This document shows, piece after piece, positions 37,125 to 63,284 of a stretch of DNA of 64,000 nucleotides (the stretch's first letter is position 1; each line of letters opens with the position of its first letter). The DNA is taken from positions 124,001 through 188,000 of IMG/VR virus record IMGVR_UViG_3300019458_000020; one strand, 5' to 3'. The position numbers were made by a program, and so were the translations under genes. Below the pieces are notes generated by a model. That model was not told the origin of the DNA. It saw nothing but the letters and a program-made list of their open reading frames with translations, and did not search any database.

Positions 37125-38207
37125 TCATTGTTTATAATCTACGTTTAAAATTTTGACCGATAGTTGTCTTCCAAGAACAGAAGAATAACGTGGTTTACAC
37201 GGTCGAAGAACGATTCCCTCTCCGTTATTTTTTCCATACTTAAAATTATTAGCAATTTCCTGTAGTCGTGCTACATTCCAAGTTTCATCTAAAATAAAAC
37301 AGTCTCCAATTTGGTCAACTGTTGGAATATCCAATATTGCACAAGTCAACACAATTTGTCCCCAATCGAGCCATGCGCCATTGTCCAAATCACGAATATT
37401 GAATACACGGAATGATTTTTCCGATATTTCCATTTTGTTTCCCTGAATGGTTGGTCCAACGGCCTCGGCCTGAATTGCAATATTTCGATTGAACTTGGTC
37501 AGTTTCTCAACCAAATTTAACTTATTCACGATTGACCAAAACCCCGTTCCTTCTTTTTGTTCTAGTTTTCGGCTACAAACACGAACCTTTCCATCTTGAT
37601 AAATGATAGTACAAGAACTACCATCGGCCTTGCCTGTGATATAACACAAATCGCCACGAAGTTCATTCAATACTTCATCACCATAATTTAATAGATTGTG
37701 TTCATCCGTCATTGGTATAAGATTTGTTGGAAAATTACCTACTGCTTCAGAACTAATTGGTTCTGGCTTTTCGTATTTGATGATACCAAGAATTTCAGTA
37801 ACGTCGTCGCCCTCCTTTAGATTAGCGATGTTTTTTTCAACTTGAAATACCTCATTACCAATTTCTTTTGAATTTTTAAGAAGAATATCACACGGACATA
37901 CCAATCCCTGAGATGGTGCCCCTTTGAATCTACAATTCCAGATCCGATACTTTTGACGTTCCAAAAAAGAAAAAAATGGATTGGTAGAAGGAACAATGGT
38001 GTCAATAGTAATAAAAACAACCAAATCACCTTCTTTGAATTCGCCTTTCTTGATAACGACCGGCCATTCTTTGATTTTGGCTACCTCTAATCTTTCAACC
38101 TCTTTATTAGGATGTGGTTGAATCAAGTGGATTCTTTGAATTGTTGCTAAATTTTTCATTAGATGTATAAAATTTCGTCGGTTTTTACTAAAAAATATTG
38201 ATAACAA
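37125..38207 (-). CDS. RNA ligase, DRB0094 (Rnl2-like) family; start probably MKNLATIQ
   Basis: LATIQRI...PHP..ERLEVAKI..W.VVIKKGEFKEGDLVVF; motif I ITGKADGSS; AEAVG..IQGN; GEGIVLRP; VKILN. Confidence 0.88.
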   Translation of the reverse strand: MLSIFFSKNRRNFIHLMKNLATIQRIHLIQPHPNKEVERLEVAKIKEWPVVIKKGEFKEGDLVVFITIDTIVPSTNPFFSFLERQKYRIWNCRFKGAPSQGLVCPCDILLKNSKEIGNEVFQVEKNIANLKEGDDVTEILGIIKYEKPEPISSEAVGNFPTNLIPMTDEHNLLNYGDEVLNELRGDLCYITGKADGSSCTIIYQDGKVRVCSRKLEQKEGTGFWSIVNKLNLVEKLTKFNRNIAIQAEAVGPTIQGNKMEISEKSFRVFNIRDLDNGAWLDWGQIVLTCAILDIPTVDQIGDCFILDETWNVARLQEIANNFKYGKNNGEGIVLRPCKPRYSSVLGRQLSVKILNVDYKQ

Positions 38208-39302: not shown

Positions 39303-39331
39303 ATAATACACTCGAACAAATCGATTGTCAA
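39303..39331 (-). promoter_or_regulatory. Sigma70-like promoter TTGACA-17-TATTAT
   Basis: Direct read; immediately upstream of two Met tRNAs. Confidence 0.7.
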
Positions 39332-39780
39332 ATCAAATTCCAGAGAGTTTTTAAAGATTCATCTGGTGTTTGACGGGTAGTGTTGATAGGTATAAAATTC
39401 TCCAAAGGTTCTTCGAACTCTTTGCAGTGGAAGGATTCACGGCCACGAACTTCGTTAGTATAAACATAAATTTCTTTTATACCAAATTGAGATTTCTTGA
39501 ATTTTTCTCTAACTTCTCTATAAGGATTTACTGTTGAAATGATGACACAAATACCTTGGTTATTAATATGTCTTACTAAATTTTGAAGTATTTCAGTTTG
39601 TTGAATTCTATATTCTTTGGTAAAATTTTCCTTATTGTAAGAATTACCAAATATTGTTCTAAGGTCGTCTCCATCGAGATGAAGAATCGTATCAGACCCT
39701 AACGCTTCGAATGCGTTTTTTAATTTTTTAGCTAATGTGGTCTTTCCACAACCAGGCTGACCTATGAACCAATATATCAT
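39328..39780 (-). CDS. cysC: Adenylyl-sulfate kinase (CysC)-like P-loop kinase
   Basis: IYWFIGQPGCGKTTLA; LDGDDLR; ISTVNPYREVR; FEEP. Confidence 0.75.
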   Translation of the reverse strand: MIYWFIGQPGCGKTTLAKKLKNAFEALGSDTILHLDGDDLRTIFGNSYNKENFTKEYRIQQTEILQNLVRHINNQGICVIISTVNPYREVREKFKKSQFGIKEIYVYTNEVRGRESFHCKEFEEPLENFIPINTTRQTPDESLKTLWNLI

Positions 39781-39804: not shown

Positions 39805-40368
39805 TTATTTTTTTACAAAATCGATTTTATTCCAATCATCCATTCTTGCACTTAATCCATCACAAAGATGCAAAATCCAAGCAACTTTTGTGTTCGGAGA
39901 AACCGGACTTCCCCATTCTCTATGTCCGTGGTGAGCTAAAATTGCATGTAAAACCGAGTCGTGATATTTTGATTTTACTTCGGGGAAAGATTCTACAGCG
40001 TGACTCCACATTAAAGCCGAACGAGAGATATGATGAATCATTCGTTTATGAACTGTAGGGCCCCAAACGTTAAAATCTTTCTTTTCATAATCATGAATTT
40101 TTCCAACATCATGATACAAAGCAGCAAGAAACAATTCCACGTCATCTACATCTTTTAGCTTTAAAGTTTCTTTGGTAGAAAAACAAAGACGAATAACTTC
40201 TAATGTGTGTTCGGATAATCCATTATCACGATAATGATGATGGTCTGATTTTGCACTTCCCGACCATGTTTGGGGTCGATGGTCATGTAATACATGATGT
40301 ATTAAACTAATAACATCACTTGAAAAGTGAAATGTTTTTGCTAAGTCGTATATTTCATCTACAAACAT
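39805..40368 (-). CDS. HD-domain phosphohydrolase, YhaM/Cbf1-like (no OB fold)
   Basis: HHHY..GLSEHTLEV; LYHDVGKI; ILAHHG..EWGSPV.P; LHLCD.LSA. Start reset to 40368 because the longer ORF overlaps tRNA-Ala. Confidence 0.85.
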   Translation of the reverse strand: MFVDEIYDLAKTFHFSSDVISLIHHVLHDHRPQTWSGSAKSDHHHYRDNGLSEHTLEVIRLCFSTKETLKLKDVDDVELFLAALYHDVGKIHDYEKKDFNVWGPTVHKRMIHHISRSALMWSHAVESFPEVKSKYHDSVLHAILAHHGHREWGSPVSPNTKVAWILHLCDGLSARMDDWNKIDFVKK

Positions 40369-40380
40369 AAAATCAAATCT

Positions 40381-40454
40381 TGGTGGAGCCAAAGAGAATT
40401 GAACCCTTATCTATTCATTGCGAATGAATCATCCTCCCGTTGAACGATGACCCC
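40381..40454 (-). tRNA. trnA: tRNA-Ala(CGC)
   Basis: TT-CGC-AA loop; G3.U70 present; CCA. Confidence 0.92.
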
Positions 40455-47490: not shown

Positions 47491-47519
47491 ATTATAATCT
47501 TGATTCATCCGTTTGTCAA
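47491..47519 (-). promoter_or_regulatory. Consensus sigma70 promoter TTGACA-17-TATAAT
   Basis: Direct read. Confidence 0.85.
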
Positions 47520-47851
47520 CTTCCTATTTTTATACTGTCTTCTCTGGCTTGGTCAATTGATGAATTAATTAACATATAAAGATTGACAGGGTGGAAACCA
47601 TCCAACCAAGTCTTGCCGCCACTTATATGGAATTGTTCTGCGCTCCAGTGATGAACTTCACAAAGAGTTATGCCGTTTGATAAAACGTAACCACCATTAG
47701 GCATTTCTTTACGGTCTGTAATGTGATGGGCATCCAAATTTTCGGTCTTACCACATATTATACATTTATGGCCGTCTCTTTTGAAGACTGCCTTATTAAA
47801 CTTCTTTCGAAGTTCTTTATGTAGTTGTTTGTTTGACATACTCCATCTCAA
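47516..47851 (-). CDS. HNH endonuclease
   Basis: VFKRDGHKCIICG...LDAHHI...NGITLCEVHH. Confidence 0.85.
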   Translation of the reverse strand: MRWSMSNKQLHKELRKKFNKAVFKRDGHKCIICGKTENLDAHHITDRKEMPNGGYVLSNGITLCEVHHWSAEQFHISGGKTWLDGFHPVNLYMLINSSIDQAREDSIKIGS

Positions 47852-49611: not shown

Positions 49612-49812
49612 TTACTTACCCTTACCACTCAATTCCTTCGTTAATTCAGCAAGTCTTTGAGTTTTCATACTTCTTTGTTCCGAAGTAAGTTCCTTGTCTG
49701 ACAAACGACGATTGAGACGGTTCAATCTATTTCTCTTTTTTCCTAAAATGTGTGCATCATTCATAATATTTGATTGTATAATTTTTAAATAACATTGTAT
49801 TGTTTTGCCCAT
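49612..49812 (-). CDS. Small basic hypothetical protein
   Basis: ORF track. Confidence 0.4.
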   Translation of the reverse strand: MGKTIQCYLKIIQSNIMNDAHILGKKRNRLNRLNRRLSDKELTSEQRSMKTQRLAELTKELSGKGK

Positions 49813-50366
49813 TTTCTAATTGAATTATCAGTTACTCCATAAATTCTTGAAATAGATAATATAGAATTTTCCTTTATTAACTTAATCAATTCTTTTTTAG
49901 ATGGTCTTTCACACTTTCTGTAACTCATATCTCTACAATTAGTAGAACAAAACTTTTGTTTACCTCTGGCATCAAAATCCTTTTTACAATGTCCACAAAT
50001 CTTCATATTCTTCTGAGTAATATGTATTTTATTTTTCCACGGAATAGTAGATATAATTAAATCTCTTCCACCGTATTCTTCTACATCTTTAAGAAATTGT
50101 TCATTTTCATAATCAGAATGATGTATTGAATGACAATTAGAACATAATAAATCACATTTTTCTACTTCTTTCCAATATTTTTCCCAGTTTGTTGTTACCA
50201 TATTAGATATACCAAATTCTTTTCCCCTCGGGTCTCTATGATGAAAATCGAAGGCCGCTATGTTTCCACTCCAACCACAATTTTTACATTTTCCACCTTT
50301 AAGCCTGACAGCTTCTCTTTTTAATCTAAACCTTCTTATTTTTGTTAAATATGCTTGTTTTGTCAT
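49785..50366 (-). CDS. HNH endonuclease with Zn-ribbon and HTH tail
   Basis: KGGKCKNCG...FDFHHRDP...EVEKCDLLCSNCH..HH. Confidence 0.88.
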   Translation of the reverse strand: MTKQAYLTKIRRFRLKREAVRLKGGKCKNCGWSGNIAAFDFHHRDPRGKEFGISNMVTTNWEKYWKEVEKCDLLCSNCHSIHHSDYENEQFLKDVEEYGGRDLIISTIPWKNKIHITQKNMKICGHCKKDFDARGKQKFCSTNCRDMSYRKCERPSKKELIKLIKENSILSISRIYGVTDNSIRKWAKQYNVI

Positions 50367-53298: not shown

Positions 53299-53410
53299 AT
53301 TAAATTAAATTTCTGGATTTCACAAAGAGTAATTAAACGTAGTACTCCATCTAATTACTGGTTCCGCACGTTGGCGTCTATCAGGTTCTTGTAGTATTAC
53401 CTTACTTCAT

Positions 53411-53481
53411 CAACTCTTTGGAATCGAACCAAATCCTCAACGGCAAATCGTTGACCAATGCTACCATTACACTATTAATTG
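53411..53481 (-). pseudogene. Pseudo-tRNA (D- and T-arms intact, 6-nt anticodon loop, decayed acceptor)
   Basis: TAGTGTAATGGTAGCAT; CAACG ATTTGC CGTTG; TTTGG TTCGATT CCAAA; no CCA. Confidence 0.6.
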
Positions 53482-53681
53482 CCTTCGGTATAATACACAA
53501 TAAAAATCATCCCAGAGTATCGTTGCAACTAGCTTTAAGAAAGTCGAATTTGACACCGTTACAAGTCGCCATTCAAAAGGAGTAATGAATGTCTGAACAG
53601 AGTTTAGCTCCACGTTCTCCGGGGGAAAATTTACAAGGATTTCACTACGATTCTAATGATCACTCGAATCTTAATATTCCA

Positions 53682-55464: not shown

Positions 55465-55554
55465 TGGTGCGCCGGGTGGGATTTGAACCCACAGTGGAGG
55501 ATTTCCCTCATTAGGTTAAAAGCCTAATAGTTTCAGCCGTTTACTTACCGACAT
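55465..55554 (-). tRNA. trnK: tRNA-Lys(TTT) with long variable arm
   Basis: TTAGG CTTTTAA CCTAA; GAGG-GAAAT-CCTC extra arm; CCA. Confidence 0.82.
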
Positions 55555-57100: not shown

Positions 57101-57191
57101 TGGTCGGAGTGGTGGGATTCGAACCCACAAGGTCATAAAAGACGCCGAGTTCCAAGCTCGGGTGGCTACCAAGTTACCTCCCTACACTCTG
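57101..57191 (-). tRNA. trnP: tRNA-Pro(TGG) with long variable arm and enlarged D-loop
   Basis: CCGAG CTTGGAA CTCGG; GTC-TTTTAT-GAC extra arm; CCA. Confidence 0.75.
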
Positions 57192-57198
57192 AAAAATC

Positions 57199-57276
57199 TG
57201 GTCTCCCCGGTCGGATTTGAACCGACATTATTCTTGACCCCAAATCAAGTGCCATACCAAGTTAGGCGACGAAGAG
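57199..57276 (-). tRNA. trnP: tRNA-Pro(TGG)
   Basis: CTTGA TTTGGGG TCAAG; CCA. Confidence 0.8.
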
Positions 57277-57286
57277 AATTAAAAAT

Positions 57287-57447
57287 TGGCTCCAGCATCG
57301 GGACTCGAACCCAAACTAACAGCTATAAGGCCGTCGTGCTGCCTACTAGAAATGCGGAATCTCAACGGTTACTACATCATTTTTATTACGTATTCAAAAC
57401 GCCTTCATCCGTTTACTACACCCGACTAGCAATTACACTATACCGGA
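57287..57447 (-). tRNA. Interrupted tRNA (Asn/Gln-like body) with ~87-nt D-loop insertion and 6-nt anticodon loop
   Basis: TCCGGTA/TGCTGGA-G-CCA acceptor; GTGTAATT[insert]GGCAGCAC; ACGGC CTTATA GCTGT; TTGGG TTCGAGT CCCGA. Confidence 0.65.
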
Positions 57448-57456
57448 ATTTAAAAT

Positions 57457-57530
57457 TGGCTGGGACGGCTCGAATCGCACGAGCATCATGCGGGTAACAG
57501 CCGCAGGTCCTACTGTTGAACGACATCCCA
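57457..57530 (-). tRNA. trnN: tRNA-Asn(GTT), T-loop TGCGATT
   Basis: TGCGG CTGTTAC CCGCA; CCA. Confidence 0.85.
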
Positions 57531-57531
57531 A

Positions 57532-57963
57532 TTAAATTGTAATTAATCCTGCATGAACTTCTCCGTGACAATTCGAACACAGAAGAGAACATTTATTTAC
57601 TTCTTTCTTTAAGGATTCAAAAGATTTTGATTTTGAAGTAATTCCAAAACTTTTCTGTTTAGGATCACGATGATGGAAAATTAGACTGGCCATACATCGG
57701 CTGTAACCACATTTTTCACATTTACCTCCTTTATATGTTACTAATCTAATTTTTATTTTACGTCTCCACGTCACCACTTTTCCGCTTCTTCGTTGTCTTC
57801 TTTCTTCATCAGATAATCTAGCTCTACGAACATGAAGAACTTTAATTAATGTTCTTTTACACCAGCCAAACTTTTTGGTAATATCATCTAAAGTATTACC
57901 TTTATTGTAAAAAGATTGGAGAATTTTTATTTCGTTTTCAGTAGGTGGTACACTTCTTTTCAT
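57532..57963 (-). CDS. HNH endonuclease with N-terminal HTH (paralogue of 49785-50366)
   Basis: YKGGKCEKCGY...FHHRDP...KEVNKCSLLCSNCHGEVH. Confidence 0.88.
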   Translation of the reverse strand: MKRSVPPTENEIKILQSFYNKGNTLDDITKKFGWCKRTLIKVLHVRRARLSDEERRQRRSGKVVTWRRKIKIRLVTYKGGKCEKCGYSRCMASLIFHHRDPKQKSFGITSKSKSFESLKKEVNKCSLLCSNCHGEVHAGLITI

Positions 57964-58005: not shown

Positions 58006-58093
58006 TGGCTCCAGGAGATGGATTCGAACCACCGGCGGGCTATTCACCTACAGATTAACAGTCTGTCGTCTGCTACCACTCGACTACCCTGGA
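58006..58093 (-). tRNA. trnN: tRNA-Asn(GTT) with long variable region
   Basis: ACAGA CTGTTAA TCTGT; 16-nt extra region; TCC/GGA-G-CCA. Confidence 0.85.
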
Positions 58094-58106
58094 ATAAAAA
58101 ATTGAA

Positions 58107-58169
58107 TTGATGGAATAGGAATTGAACCTATATGTCGGGGCCCCAACGTTTACCAAAATCACCCATCAA
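58107..58169 (-). pseudogene. Anticodon-less tRNA-like element
   Basis: TTGATGG/CCATCAA stem; ATAGG TTCAATT CCTAT; anticodon arm collapsed to GTTGG-GGCC-CCGAC. Confidence 0.5.
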
Positions 58170-58248: not shown

Positions 58249-58337
58249 TGGTGGTGCCGGTGGGAGTCGAACCCACGGTGGATTATTAATCGTCGGATTA
58301 AAAGTCCGGTGCTTTCGGCCTCTAAGCAAACGACACC
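58249..58337 (-). tRNA. trnK: tRNA-Lys(TTT) with long variable arm
   Basis: CCGGA CTTTTAA TCCGA; GATT-AAT-AATC extra arm; CCA. Confidence 0.85.
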
Positions 58338-58703: not shown

Positions 58704-58777
58704 TGGCAAGCGCCGTCAGAATCGAACTGACATCTTTCGTTTTGGAGACGAAGGTAATACCATTATACAAGACGCCT
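58704..58777 (-). tRNA. trnW: tRNA-Trp(CCA)
   Basis: TTCGT CTCCAAA ACGAA; G73; CCA. Confidence 0.92.
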
Positions 58778-59204
58778 AATAATAAAAAAATTTCCGAGAA
58801 GAAATTTCTAAATAATCTTCTCCTATCAACCCCTTCGCTTTTAATAACGAAGTTAATTCCAAAAGGTTCATGTTTACCATTTTTGCTACACGTTTCAAAC
58901 AACGTCTTCTAAGACGTTTTCGATAACGAAAATCTTCTTTTTTAGACTCTTCATTCTTTTCTTTGTCTAATTTTAGATGAATCTTTTTATGACATCCACG
59001 ACAAAGAACAATTAAATCTCTTAATGAGACATCATACAAATTTTTATATCTTTTATGATGAACATCTAAAACATGAATAGAATTACATCTTTGACAACAA
59101 GGATTGTATAGAAATTTTTTCTTCTTTAATTCTTTCCAATGGTCGCTTTTAAGATAATCATTTCTATAATACTCTCGTTTGTCGTTAATTTTCTTCATTG
59201 ACAA
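58776..59204 (-). CDS. HNH endonuclease
   Basis: YLKSDHWKE...CQRC...LDVHHKRY...LIVLCRGCHKKIH. Confidence 0.85.
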   Translation of the reverse strand: MSMKKINDKREYYRNDYLKSDHWKELKKKKFLYNPCCQRCNSIHVLDVHHKRYKNLYDVSLRDLIVLCRGCHKKIHLKLDKEKNEESKKEDFRYRKRLRRRCLKRVAKMVNMNLLELTSLLKAKGLIGEDYLEISSRKFFYY

Positions 59205-62502: not shown

Positions 62503-62748
62503 TTATACTCTATCAACTTCTGGAGTCTCGTCTTTGAATTCTACAATACTCTGACATTCTTGAATATATCTTCTTCTAATACGATTATTTGAACAATCAC
62601 AATGGTCTTCTGGACTCCAAAAATTATTCATATTACATCCATCGGCGTGAGGATTTTTATTCATAAATTCTCTAGCTAAACTTAATAGTTCTTCTGTAAC
62701 AATATATTTTTTCATAATTCTTCGAGATAAAATCCAGCCGAAGGCCAA
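62503..62748 (-). CDS. Hypothetical protein
   Basis: ORF track. Confidence 0.45.
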   Translation of the reverse strand: MAFGWILSRRIMKKYIVTEELLSLAREFMNKNPHADGCNMNNFWSPEDHCDCSNNRIRRRYIQECQSIVEFKDETPEVDRV

Positions 62749-62825
62749 GTTTTAAAATTAACTATAGCATTTTGACGGTCCGTTTCACTCATAATCATTG
62801 TAGGGAAAATGGATACACATATTCC

Positions 62826-63284
62826 TTACCTAATAGATACCATTTTGACCACTCCATTTTTCATTCTCATGAATACAGGCAAAGCCTTATATCCTTCCAA
62901 TACACTAGAATTTTTATCCACTCTTGCTAAAGAATTCACCAATTCTTTTAAATCATTTAGACGCATTTGTGATTCCATATATTTGTTCATTTTTTCGGAT
63001 ACGAGAAATATTTTCTCCATGTGAGTCAATTGTTTAATCTGATGTTCTCTTTTCATGGCTTCCGACTTTGTAGGAAATTCTTCTTGATACAATAATACAA
63101 CAGGCAACCTTCCTCGTGTATATTTTGCCCCTTTGCCAGCATTATGTTTCAAAACTCTGGCATCAACGTCATTTGTGTATCCGGTATATAATGTATTATC
63201 CGAACAAATGACTATATAAACGTAAAATTTCGTTCTTATCTGAATACGATTTTTACGATTTTGGTTGCGTCGTCGGTTGTCCAT
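62826..63284 (-). CDS. GIY-YIG nuclease, UPF0213/YhbQ-like
   Basis: [47 protein letters not shown]....SEAMKRE..IK. Confidence 0.88.

What the first reader, a model, noticed from the sequence alone, without database searches (positions are those of the whole stretch)
57287..57447. tRNA split by an 87-nt D-loop insertion
Seen: removing 57344-57430 leaves a 74-nt tRNA with an intact acceptor (TCCGGTA/TGCTGGA, G73, CCA), D-arm GTGTAATT-GGCAGCAC and T-arm, but a 6-nt anticodon loop (CTTATA). The insert is closed by GCTAG/CTAGT and contains a near-direct repeat, TGTAGTAAACG / TGTAGTAACCG. It is too small for a group I intron and lies at a non-canonical intron position. Inference: either a protein-spliced intron (needing an endonuclease plus a ligase; an RNA ligase is encoded in the island), or a tRNA-scaffolded ncRNA/decoy.
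Basis: partly seen in the sequence, partly recalled or inferred. Interest (0 to 1): 0.65.

Follow-up and report, generated by a model that had tools for sequence, protein, structure and literature searches.

The report
Phage tRNA gene with D-loop insert
In the tRNA gene array of a large uncultured cave phage, an isoleucine-type tRNA gene is split in its D-loop by a unique 87-base hairpin-forming insert and has a one-base-short anticodon loop; it fits no known intron type, and whether it is an extra-armed RNA, a spliced tRNA or a dying gene needs RNA data.

Summary
On the minus strand, 57447-57431 plus 57343-57287 form a 74-nt cloverleaf with all the usual tertiary nucleotides, G73 and an encoded CCA. 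An 87-nt insert (57430-57344) lies between U17 and G18. The anticodon loop has 6 nt (CUUAUA).

The junction restores a D-arm that is 19/19 identical to uninterrupted phage tRNAs. The exons are 56/74 identical to a phage tRNA-Ile(UAU). Three assemblies from at least two cave samples carry the same locus, so it is not a chimera.

The insert is unique in the genome. It matches no Rfam family and has no bulge-helix-bulge in any register. It cannot satisfy both group I terminal rules. The 250-kb record has no EndA or RtcB.

The insert leaves cloverleaf folding almost undisturbed: only 2 of 399 random 87-mers from the same genome do as well. Most of this comes from its GCUAG/CUAGU closing helix.

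My best reading (about 0.35) is a 161-nt tRNA-like RNA that keeps the insert as an extra arm and no longer decodes. Rivals are a recent pseudogene (0.30), a non-canonical spliced intron (0.13) and excision without ligation (0.07). No orthologue and no RNA run exist, so this stays open. The closest precedent is the "enigmatic" tRNA introns of Lak megaphages.

The parts
57431..57447 (-). 5' segment of the tRNA: acceptor 5' strand UCCGGUA (57447-57441), U8 A9, D-stem 5' strand GUGU (57438-57435), D-loop A14 A15 U16 U17 (57434-57431)
   Evidence: Sequence. ARAGORN cloverleaf after removal of the insert. The preceding spacer matches the spacer after the gene (repeat D1).
57344..57430 (-). 87-nt insert between U17 and G18, 38% G+C. 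The register is ambiguous by 1 nt. It forms an irregular rod-like hairpin.
   Evidence: Unique in the 250-kb genome. No Rfam family at E<=10. Fold energy no better than shuffles, z = +0.37.
57426..57430 (-). 5' arm of the closing helix (GCUAG). In the MFE fold it extends to U16 and U17.
   Evidence: Keeping these 5 nt plus the last 6 nt of the insert while shuffling the interior keeps most of the cloverleaf compatibility.
57344..57349 (-). 3' arm of the closing helix (CUAGU) plus A
57410..57420 (-). First copy of the near-direct repeat, TGTAGTAAACG
   Evidence: family D2, 10/11 identical, spacing 44..
57366..57376 (-). Second copy of the near-direct repeat, TGTAGTAACCG
57287..57343 (-). 3' segment: G18 G19 C A (57343-57340), D-stem 3' strand GCAC (57339-57336), G26, anticodon arm, variable loop UAGU, T-arm, acceptor 3' strand, G73, CCA
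   Evidence: Local Rfam tRNA match 57290-57350, 16.6 bits.
57324..57329 (-). 6-nt anticodon loop CUUAUA. Related phage tRNA-Ile(UAU) genes have the 7-nt loop CUUAUAA.
   Evidence: No indel in any of the three assemblies.
57336..57336 (-). The only polymorphism in the gene: C25 to U25 in the second strain, turning G10-C25 into G10.U25
57532..57963 (-). Free-standing HNH endonuclease gene, one tRNA gene upstream of the split tRNA (context, a possible source of DNA breaks)
   Evidence: PHROG 2255 and others, E 6.5e-27. The family recurs in tRNA islands of 70 viral contigs.

Best explanation
This was a normal AUA-reading tRNA-Ile(UAU) gene of a roughly 340-kb phage. It has acquired two changes: an 87-nt AU-rich insert, closed on itself, between U17 and G18 of the D-loop, and the loss of one base from the anticodon loop.

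Inferred: it is transcribed with its neighbours in the minus-strand tRNA array. It is cut at the same 5' and 3' spacer signals as they are, giving a 161-nt RNA. In that RNA the acceptor, T and anticodon arms and the D-stem still form, and the insert projects from the D-arm as a long irregular extra arm.

The first G of the G18-G19 pair is drawn into the closing helix and the anticodon loop has only 6 nt. The RNA therefore most likely no longer decodes. I take it to persist as a tRNA-shaped, non-decoding RNA, a scaffold or decoy, like the other acceptor/T-arm RNAs of this genome.

Shown here: the anatomy, that the DNA is real, the absence of known intron or ribozyme signatures, and the fold compatibility. 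Inferred: transcription, end processing, retention of the insert and any function.
For: - Anatomy and identity. The exons are 56/74 identical to a phage tRNA-Ile(UAU).
- Same spacer at both ends as the neighbouring tRNAs: AGCCAATTTT(T/A)AATTC.
- Same locus in three assemblies.
- The ensemble probability of the cloverleaf is 0.153 with the native insert and 0.132 with no insert. The median is 0.0025 for dinucleotide shuffles (1/400 reach the native value) and 0.0017 for random 87-mers of the same genome (2/399).
- The single SNP keeps the D-stem pair.
- No ribozyme or intron family matches, no BHB exists, and EndA and RtcB are absent.
- The same genome encodes other RNAs with a perfect 7-bp acceptor stem, T-arm and CCA around non-tRNA cores of 55, 124 and 186 nt.
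- Extra arms are common in this island and in related phage tRNA-Ile(UAU) genes.
Against: - No transcript data of any kind exist.
- No orthologue exists, so there is no covariation or conservation test.
- The insert's own fold is no more stable than shuffles.
- Most of the compatibility signal comes from a 5-bp terminal helix built on a CTAG palindrome. That helix could be a by-product of how the DNA was inserted. With the helix kept, 9.7% of interior shuffles do as well as the native insert.
- Two lesions in one gene is what a pseudogene looks like, and the island holds at least one clearly decayed tRNA (53406-53547).
Confidence: 0.35

Rival explanations
1. A recently inactivated pseudogene. 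A DNA-level event put 87 nt of junk into the D-loop, for example faulty repair of a break made by one of the homing endonucleases that riddle the island. A 1-nt deletion hit the anticodon loop. The gene has no function and simply has not decayed yet.
For: - Two independent lesions in one gene.
- The insert has no homologue, no significant structure and intergenic-like composition.
- HNH genes at 57532-57963 and 58776-59204 flank the sub-cluster.
- Homing endonucleases of phage tRNA arrays are known to cut inside tRNA genes (PMC13096335).
- Another decayed tRNA with a 6-nt loop, a broken acceptor stem and no CCA lies at 53406-53547.
- The phage has four CAU-anticodon tRNA genes, and any of them might read AUA after lysidine modification. 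That reading is inference.
Against: - All 26 helix pairs, every tertiary nucleotide, G73 and CCA are intact.
- The insert spares the cloverleaf better than 99.5% of random genomic 87-mers.
- The only SNP preserves a pair.
- AUA is a heavily used codon: 23.4 per 1000, a third of Ile codons. Loss of a dedicated decoder should therefore cost something.
Confidence: 0.3
2. A true intervening sequence of a new kind. The insert is cut out and the halves are joined by a phage or host endonuclease together with the island's kinase, HD phosphohydrolase and RNA ligase, giving a 74-nt tRNA.
For: - The junction restores a canonical D-arm exactly.
- A healing-and-sealing enzyme set is encoded 17-20 kb away in the same island.
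- The insert keeps the tRNA body folded, as a structure-guided processing reaction would need.
- Lak megaphages carry unexplained, conserved tRNA introns (PMC6784885).
Against: - No BHB exists.
- No EndA or RtcB is present.
- No ribozyme family matches.
- At 87 nt it is too short for group I. No single register gives both a 5' exon ending in U and an intron ending in G (sequence).
- The product would still carry a 6-nt anticodon loop.
- No spliced form appears in any data. Only DNA contigs were available.
Confidence: 0.13
3. Excision without ligation, as with the intervening sequences of bacterial 23S rRNA. Host RNases cut the AU-rich insert and trim it. The result is a two-piece tRNA (about 17-25 nt plus about 57-65 nt) held together by the acceptor stem, the D-stem and the closing helix.
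For: - The interior of the insert is AU-rich and weakly paired.
- The two halves share 7 + 4 + 5-7 base pairs.
- Nicked tRNAs can remain stable in cells (PMC9942843, title and abstract only).
Against: - There is no long perfect duplex for RNase III.
- No data exist.
- The 6-nt loop would still impair decoding.
Confidence: 0.07
4. The insert exists because of selection at the DNA level. It splits a conserved D-arm sequence that a homing endonuclease recognises, so the insert-bearing allele is immune. It was tolerated because it folds away from the tRNA body. This concerns origin and is compatible with any of the RNA fates above.
For: - The split 19-mer is identical in tRNAs of unrelated phages, so it would make a good endonuclease target.
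- The HNH gene lies 85-190 bp upstream.
- Its family sits beside tRNA-Asn genes in most of the 70 viral loci. In 14 of them the adjacent tRNA-Asn is abnormally long (82-91 nt).
- In some loci an aberrant tRNA-like gene follows the HNH gene directly.
- SegB of T-even phages cuts within tRNA genes.
Against: This is purely circumstantial. The target of this HNH family is unknown, and the family associates with tRNA-Asn rather than tRNA-Ile.
Confidence: 0.1

Closest known systems
"Enigmatic" tRNA introns of Lak megaphages (Devoto et al. 2019, PMC6784885)
   Same: Short insertions of unknown mechanism inside tRNA genes of very large phages. They are unclassifiable by Rfam, and the genes are otherwise intact.
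   Different: The Lak introns were predicted with tRNAscan's eukaryote settings, and one excision point was adjusted from alignments with insert-free alleles. That setting places introns in the anticodon loop (my knowledge). They are conserved across cohorts and show presence/absence alleles. This insert is in the D-loop, is known from one phage only, has no insert-free allele, and comes with a 6-nt anticodon loop.
Archaeal non-canonical tRNA introns, including D-loop positions, cut at a bulge-helix-bulge by EndA (e.g. PMC3241643, title and abstract only)
   Same: An intervening sequence at a non-37/38 position. Removing it restores the cloverleaf exactly.
   Different: No BHB exists in any register. 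No EndA or RtcB is in the record. The setting is bacterial-virus-like: myovirus-type baseplate and terminase.
Group I introns in bacterial and phage tRNA genes (PMC3984707, title and abstract only)
   Same: An insertion in a conserved tRNA site in a region rich in homing endonuclease genes.
   Different: At 87 nt it is far below group I size (size limit from my knowledge). No RF00028 match at E<=10. It lies in the D-loop rather than the anticodon loop. The U(-1) and terminal-G rules cannot both hold.
Intervening sequences of bacterial 23S rRNA, removed by RNase III without religation (from my own knowledge)
   Same: A hairpin insertion in a loop of a structured RNA that leaves the surrounding fold intact.
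   Different: Those occur in rRNA and have long regular stems. Nothing comparable is known for tRNA.
tRNA-like scaffold RNAs: the tRNA-like domain of YrlA/Y RNA, the tRNA-like domain of tmRNA, and the stable RNAs C and D of the T4 tRNA cluster (the T4 RNAs from memory)
   Same: An acceptor/T-arm module carrying a non-tRNA domain. The T4 RNAs are encoded inside a phage tRNA cluster.
   Different: Rfam YrlA scores only 20.6 bits against a cut-off of 69, and over a different stretch. Here a complete four-arm cloverleaf is kept.
Phage tRNAs with altered loops that escape host tRNA nucleases (PMC10264068, title and abstract only; T5 tRNA-Tyr variable loop as described in PMC13096335)
   Same: A phage-encoded tRNA with non-standard loops in an island that also carries RNA-repair genes.
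   Different: The known cases are point changes or small loop differences in tRNAs that still decode. This one has an 87-nt insert and a shortened anticodon loop.

Membership tests
tRNA (RF00005 / ARAGORN) | Contiguous cloverleaf scoring above the family threshold | tested here: not met
   ARAGORN finds nothing on the 176-nt stretch at default settings. Rfam gives only a local 16.6-bit match against a cut-off of 29.
tRNA (RF00005 / ARAGORN) | Cloverleaf with the conserved tertiary nucleotides after removal of the insert | tested here: met
   A 74-nt tRNA is called. U8, A14, A15, G18, G19, A21, U54-U55-C56, A58, G73 and CCA can be read from the sequence.
tRNA (RF00005 / ARAGORN) | 7-nt anticodon loop with U33 and a purine at 37 | tested here: not met
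   The loop is CUUAUA, 6 nt, in all three assemblies.
tRNA-Ile(UAU) | Sequence kinship with tRNA-Ile(UAU) genes and a UAU anticodon | tested here: inconclusive
   56/74 and 51/74 identity to two phage tRNA-Ile(UAU) genes that share the ...CUUAUA motif. With a 6-nt loop the anticodon cannot be assigned with certainty.
Archaeal-type (BHB) tRNA intron | Two 3-nt bulges separated by a 4-bp helix, carrying the two splice sites | tested here: not met
   All registers were enumerated. The best has 3/4 central pairs with flanks of 1/3 and 2/3. In the MFE fold both junctions lie in a continuous helix.
Archaeal-type (BHB) tRNA intron | Splicing endonuclease (EndA) and RtcB-type ligase available | tested here: not met
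   PF01974 and PF01139 are absent from the 250-kb record at E<=1. The record is about 74% complete and the host is unknown.
Group I intron | Conserved catalytic core (Rfam RF00028) | tested here: not met
   No match at E<=10 in 57200-57540. The insert is only 87 nt.
Group I intron | 5' exon ends in U and the intron ends in G | tested here: not met
   Register 1 gives U(-1) but the intron ends in A. Register 2 ends the intron in G but gives G(-1).
Small self-cleaving ribozymes (hammerhead, twister, pistol, hatchet, HDV-like) | Match to the family covariance model | tested here: not met
   No such family appears at E<=10.
Repeated mobile element (MITE/REP-like) | Further copies in the genome or elsewhere | tested here: not met
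   Only chance matches of 14 nt or less in the 250-kb genome. No match in INPHARED phages. The repeat-pattern scan of IMG/VR returned only coding tandem repeats.
Lak-type phage tRNA intron | Conserved across related phages, with insert-free alleles that define the excision points | not testable with these tools
   No relative with a tRNA island was found. The only other contig is the same phage.
Expressed stable RNA | Transcript detected | not testable with these tools
   No RNA run holds the locus.

The most novel reading that the evidence does not exclude
The insert is a new kind of tRNA intervening element in bacterial viruses. It is a short, self-insulating hairpin placed in a conserved D-arm sequence. 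It protects the gene from a tRNA-array homing endonuclease. It is either tolerated as an extra arm or removed by the phage's own RNA healing-and-sealing enzymes without a BHB or a ribozyme core.
Probability: 0.12. Interest if true: 0.8.

Novelty: new variant of a known kind. Interest (0 to 1): 0.5.

Why it matters
Outside Archaea, tRNA genes interrupted anywhere but the anticodon loop are essentially unknown. Bacterial and phage tRNA introns described so far are group I ribozymes or the unexplained Lak-phage inserts.

A D-loop insert that leaves the cloverleaf foldable is a compact test case for three questions:
- Do large phages have a non-canonical way to process tRNA?
- Do they make tRNA-shaped non-decoding RNAs, as decoys for tRNA-targeting defences or as scaffolds?
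- Do homing endonucleases in tRNA arrays drive structural insertions in tRNA genes?

If it is only a fresh pseudogene, it still documents how tRNA genes die in these arrays.

Tried and rejected
- **Known RNA families.** Rfam at gathering and at E<=10 gave nothing but tRNA and noise. The YrlA hit (20.6 bits) lies over a different stretch.
- **BHB.** Enumerating every register found none.
- **Partial duplication of the 5' end.** ARAGORN at a relaxed threshold offers a contiguous 73-nt reading that starts inside the insert (acceptor TTCCGCA). It has an acceptor mismatch and only 2 of 3 D-stem pairs. The resemblance of the insert's 3' end to the spacer plus 5' exon is not significant: local alignment p = 0.62, and repeat D3 is only 9/11. 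Rejected.
- **Mobile or repeated element.** No other copy in the genome. No phage match by megablast or blastn.
- **Shared motif with the genome's other odd tRNA-like RNAs.** An 11-mer shared with the 186-nt element is not significant: 91 of 1348 genome windows score as high.
- **IMG/VR scan for the paired TGTAGTAANCG repeat.** It returned only tandem repeats in coding genes.
- **Orthologues.**
  - The exact 3'-end pattern was not found.
  - The D-arm plus loop pattern found only two distant tRNA-Ile(UAU) genes.
  - The neighbouring 203-aa ORF has no relatives.
  - Terminase relatives are 50-60% identical (one partial match 67%), and the five longest records I searched have no tRNA island.
  - The first metagenome scan was blank. 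The second found only the same phage.
- **ARAGORN on all possible deletions of orphan T-arm loci.** It was too permissive to be useful. I replaced it with an explicit D-loop-split scan. Its other hits were tandem tRNA pairs.
- **Stop-codon recoding.** Reading TAG as sense adds little open frame. The standard code was kept throughout.
- **** was a mis-specified alignment and carries no information.
- **Reads.** Only Logan contigs were available, so the absence of a spliced or insert-free form is weak evidence.

Full report
**Setting.** The window is bases 124001-188000 of a 250.8-kb IMG/VR virus record, estimated 74% complete. The same phage occurs as a 340.9-kb JGI contig. G+C is 35.8%. A baseplate wedge protein and a large terminase mark it as a tailed jumbo phage. 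Its terminase relatives are mostly 50-60% identical.

From 36 to 62 kb the minus strand carries a tRNA island. ARAGORN genes there, and Rfam adds at least six near-normal ones. Other genes are interspersed:
- HNH endonucleases at 47516-47851, 57532-57963 and 58776-59204, plus a weak HNH match (below the Pfam cut-off) at 49785-50366
- a GIY-YIG gene at 62826-63284
- a radical-SAM gene
- an RNA-repair set: RNA ligase 37125-38207, P-loop kinase 39328-39780 and HD phosphohydrolase 39805-40392

**Checking the observation.** Read on the minus strand, 57447-57431 and 57343-57287 together make a 74-nt cloverleaf. Its parts are:
- a 7-bp acceptor stem (two G.U pairs)
- U8 A9
- D-stem GUGU/GCAC
- D-loop AAUU|GGCA
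- a 5-bp anticodon stem
- a 4-nt variable loop
- a canonical T-arm
- G73 and an encoded CCA

ARAGORN accepts the joined sequence as tRNA-?(Stop|Ile)(ta), meaning a 6-nt anticodon loop CUUAUA. It finds nothing in the unjoined sequence at default settings. Rfam's tRNA model matches only the 3' part locally, at 16.6 bits. The 87 nt between the two segments (57430-57344, or one base further 3') begin GCUAG and end CUAGUA.

Three lines of evidence show this is not a chance arrangement.
- The 19-mer across the junction is identical to the D-arm of an uninterrupted tRNA-Gly(UCC) in four other viral contigs. Shorter stretches of it match tRNA-Gln and tRNA-Trp genes in the same contigs.
- The joined exons are 56/74 and 51/74 identical to two phage tRNA-Ile(UAU) genes. 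Those genes have the 7-nt loop CUUAUAA.
- The 16-nt spacer that precedes the gene (AGCCAATTTTAAATTC) recurs, with one change, after it. The 161-nt unit therefore sits in the array exactly as a tRNA gene would.

I also ran my own scan for a 5' acceptor plus D-stem module displaced upstream of an otherwise canonical 3' part. It covered the genome and about 1.1 Mb of other phage sequence fetched up to that point, most of it tRNA-island loci. This locus was the only real case. The other hits were tandem tRNA pairs, one internal D-arm duplication, and odd tRNA-like genes.

**Is the DNA real?** Two cave-metagenome runs from two studies hold the locus. One Logan contig of 166 kb spans it with no difference. 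An independent 10.7-kb contig from the second run differs at one base. The JGI contig Ga0187893_10000017 carries that same variant. None shows an indel, an insert-free form or a 7-nt loop.

The single difference, 57336 G>A on the plus strand, changes C25 to U25. That turns G10-C25 into G10.U25. Over the 5,090 nt shared with the JGI contig there are only three differences, so the population data have no statistical power.

**What the insert is not.**
- No Rfam family reaches E<=10 in 57200-57540. That excludes group I and II introns, hammerhead, twister, pistol, hatchet and HDV-like ribozymes.
- It is too short for a group I intron. No register gives both a 5' exon ending in U and an intron ending in G.
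- No register gives a bulge-helix-bulge. In the MFE fold the two junctions lie one base pair apart within a continuous 7-bp helix.
- The record contains no EndA-type endonuclease and no RtcB.
- The insert has no second copy in the genome, no relative among deposited phages, and no detectable kin in IMG/VR through its internal repeat.
- Its apparent resemblance to the spacer plus 5' exon, and to another odd RNA of the genome, is not significant.
- Its own fold is no more stable than that of shuffled sequences, z = +0.37.

**What the insert does do.** In the full 161-nt RNA the minimum-energy and centroid structures both keep all four tRNA helices. The insert forms a separate irregular rod.

I measured this as the ensemble probability of the four cloverleaf helices:

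| Insert | Probability of cloverleaf | Reaching the native value |
|---|---|---|
| Native insert | 0.153 | n/a |
| No insert | 0.132 | n/a |
| Dinucleotide shuffles of the insert | median 0.0025 | 1 of 400 |
| Random 87-mers of the same genome | median 0.0017 | 2 of 399 |
| First 5 and last 6 nt kept, interior shuffled | median 0.07 | 9.7% |

The insulation is therefore mostly the work of the terminal GCUAG/CUAGU helix, with a modest contribution from the interior. This is the only positive evidence that the RNA, and not just the DNA, matters. It fits either a retained extra arm or an intervening sequence whose removal depends on the tRNA body. It is weaker than it looks, because a CTAG-based terminal palindrome could also be a footprint of the insertion event.

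In the predicted fold the closing helix recruits U16, U17 and the first G of the G18-G19 pair. The D-loop/T-loop contact of a normal tRNA elbow would probably be lost (inference).

**Context that bears on the interpretation.**
1. The same genome holds other RNAs with a perfect acceptor stem, T-arm and CCA but non-tRNA cores. These are elements of 124, 186 and 55 nt in a tight array beside a tRNA(CUA) at genome 194.4-195.0 kb, outside the window. The phage therefore either makes a set of tRNA-shaped non-decoding RNAs or keeps a set of decayed genes whose top halves are preserved.
2. One clearly decayed tRNA lies at 53406-53547. It has a D-arm, a 6-nt loop, a broken acceptor stem and no CCA.
3. 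Extra arms are frequent.
   - Pro(UGG), Lys(UUU) twice and Asn(GUU) genes of 88-91 nt with long variable arms lie within 2 kb of the finding.
   - 43 of 769 tRNAs in the fetched sequences (the genome plus other phage loci) are 85 nt or longer without being Ser, Leu or Tyr.
   - The two tRNA-Ile(UAU) relatives carry an extra variable arm of about 20 nt.
4. AUA is a heavily used codon in this phage, at 23.4 per 1000. No other UAU-anticodon tRNA is present. There are four CAU genes.
5. The HNH gene one tRNA upstream belongs to a family found in tRNA islands of 70 viral contigs. It is usually next to tRNA-Asn, and in 14 of those contigs the tRNA-Asn is abnormally long. In some contigs an aberrant tRNA-like gene follows directly.
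6. Published work shows that the homing endonuclease SegB cuts inside tRNA genes of T-even phage arrays. It also shows that phage tRNAs with distinctive loops escape host tRNA nucleases (PMC13096335; PMC10264068, title and abstract).

**Weighing the explanations.** Canonical splicing mechanisms are excluded as far as sequence can exclude them. A spliced product would still have a 6-nt loop, which removes the main reason to expect splicing.

The choice is then between an RNA that keeps its insert and a dead gene. For the retained-insert RNA:
- all helices and tertiary nucleotides are intact
- the insert is insulated from the tRNA fold
- the only SNP preserves a pair
- the genome encodes other tRNA-scaffold RNAs

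For the dead gene:
- there are two lesions in one gene
- the insert has no homologue and no intrinsic structure
- endonuclease genes lie nearby
- there is a decayed neighbour

I put the retained-insert, non-decoding tRNA-like RNA first at 0.35 and the recent pseudogene at 0.30. A new kind of spliced intervening sequence gets 0.13 and excision without ligation 0.07. The idea that the insert was selected as protection against a homing endonuclease concerns origin and can combine with any of these; taken on its own I give it 0.10.

**Comparison with known systems.** The closest published parallel is the set of "enigmatic" tRNA introns of Lak megaphages (PMC6784885). Those are also short, also unclassifiable, and also in huge phages. 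They differ in three ways:
- they were predicted with tRNAscan's eukaryote settings, which place introns in the anticodon loop (my knowledge)
- they are conserved across cohorts
- they have insert-free alleles

Archaeal D-loop introns work differently, through a BHB and EndA, and both features were tested here and not met. rRNA intervening sequences and tRNA-like scaffold RNAs are functional analogies only. I therefore rate this a new variant of a known kind, with moderate interest. The anatomy is unusual and well established, but its function cannot be decided without RNA data.

Noticed in passing
window 57101-57191, 55465-55554, 58006-58093, 58249-58337 (all minus strand): tRNA-Pro(UGG), tRNA-Lys(UUU) (two genes) and tRNA-Asn(GUU) genes of 88-91 nt with long, class-II-like variable arms. 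Normal-length Pro(UGG) and Asn(GUU) genes and a Lys(CUU) gene lie beside them. In the fetched sequences (this genome plus other phage loci), 43 of 769 tRNAs are 85 nt or longer without being Ser, Leu or Tyr.
   Followed up: partly
window 57532-57963 (-); loci L002-L071: This HNH endonuclease family recurs in tRNA islands of 70 viral contigs. It is usually next to tRNA-Asn(GUU): upstream within 400 nt in 19 loci and downstream in 9. In 14 loci the adjacent tRNA-Asn is 82-91 nt long. In this window the gene lies between a long and a normal tRNA-Asn.
   Followed up: partly
L013:6391-6471, and about the first 100 nt after the HNH gene in L012 (from 6373) and L036 (from 6277): Directly downstream of the HNH gene lies a tRNA-like gene. 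It has an Ile-type anticodon loop (CUGAUAA in L013 and L036, CUGAUAC in L012) and no normal D-arm. A hairpin with a D-loop-like sequence sits in the variable region. Rfam matches the L013 copy only as a tmRNA-type tRNA-like domain.
   Followed up: partly
genome 194455-195024 (minus strand; outside the window, about 70.4-71.0 kb in window numbering): A tight array sits next to a tRNA with anticodon CUA. Its elements are 124, 55, 186 and 55 nt long. Each has a 7-bp acceptor stem, a T-arm and a CCA end but a non-tRNA core.
   Followed up: partly
window 53406-53547 (-): A decayed tRNA: a recognisable D-arm (TAGTGTAATGGTAGCAT), an anticodon stem with a 6-nt loop, a T-arm, a mismatched acceptor stem and no CCA.
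   Followed up: partly
window 58104-58168 (-): A 65-nt element with a 7-bp terminal stem and a T-arm but no CCA, lying between tRNA-Asn (long) and tRNA-Lys (long).
   Followed up: no
window 37125-38207, 39328-39780, 39805-40392 (all minus strand): An RNA ligase (PF09414 plus the PHA02142 OB domain), a P-loop kinase and an HD phosphohydrolase, interleaved with tRNA genes. This looks like an RNA healing-and-sealing set.
   Followed up: no
window 62700-62907 and 62826-63284 (-): A weak GIR1 branching-ribozyme-like match (20.4 bits, E 0.85) overlaps the 3' part of a GIY-YIG endonuclease ORF. It may be a remnant of a group I intron and homing-endonuclease unit, or it may be noise.
   Followed up: no
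whole genome: TAG ends only 3 of 133 long ORFs, and a tRNA(CUA) is encoded. Reading TAG as sense adds little open frame, so there is no sign of recoding.
   Followed up: partly
L008:12204-12302: A tRNA-Met(CAU)-like gene in another phage whose D-arm region (CTGTAGCTCAAGTGGTTAGAGC) is tandemly duplicated inside the gene.
   Followed up: no
L078 and L092 (tRNA-Ile(UAU), 92 nt); L060: Phage tRNA-Ile(UAU) genes related to the exons of the finding carry an extra variable arm of about 20 nt. L060 also has a 93-nt Ile(UAU).
   Followed up: partly
window 55553: In the second strain, nucleotide 2 of the long tRNA-Lys(UUU) changes U to C. This turns the U2.G71 pair into C2-G71. One of the only three differences in 5,090 nt is therefore again pair-preserving, and again in an aberrant tRNA.
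   Followed up: no
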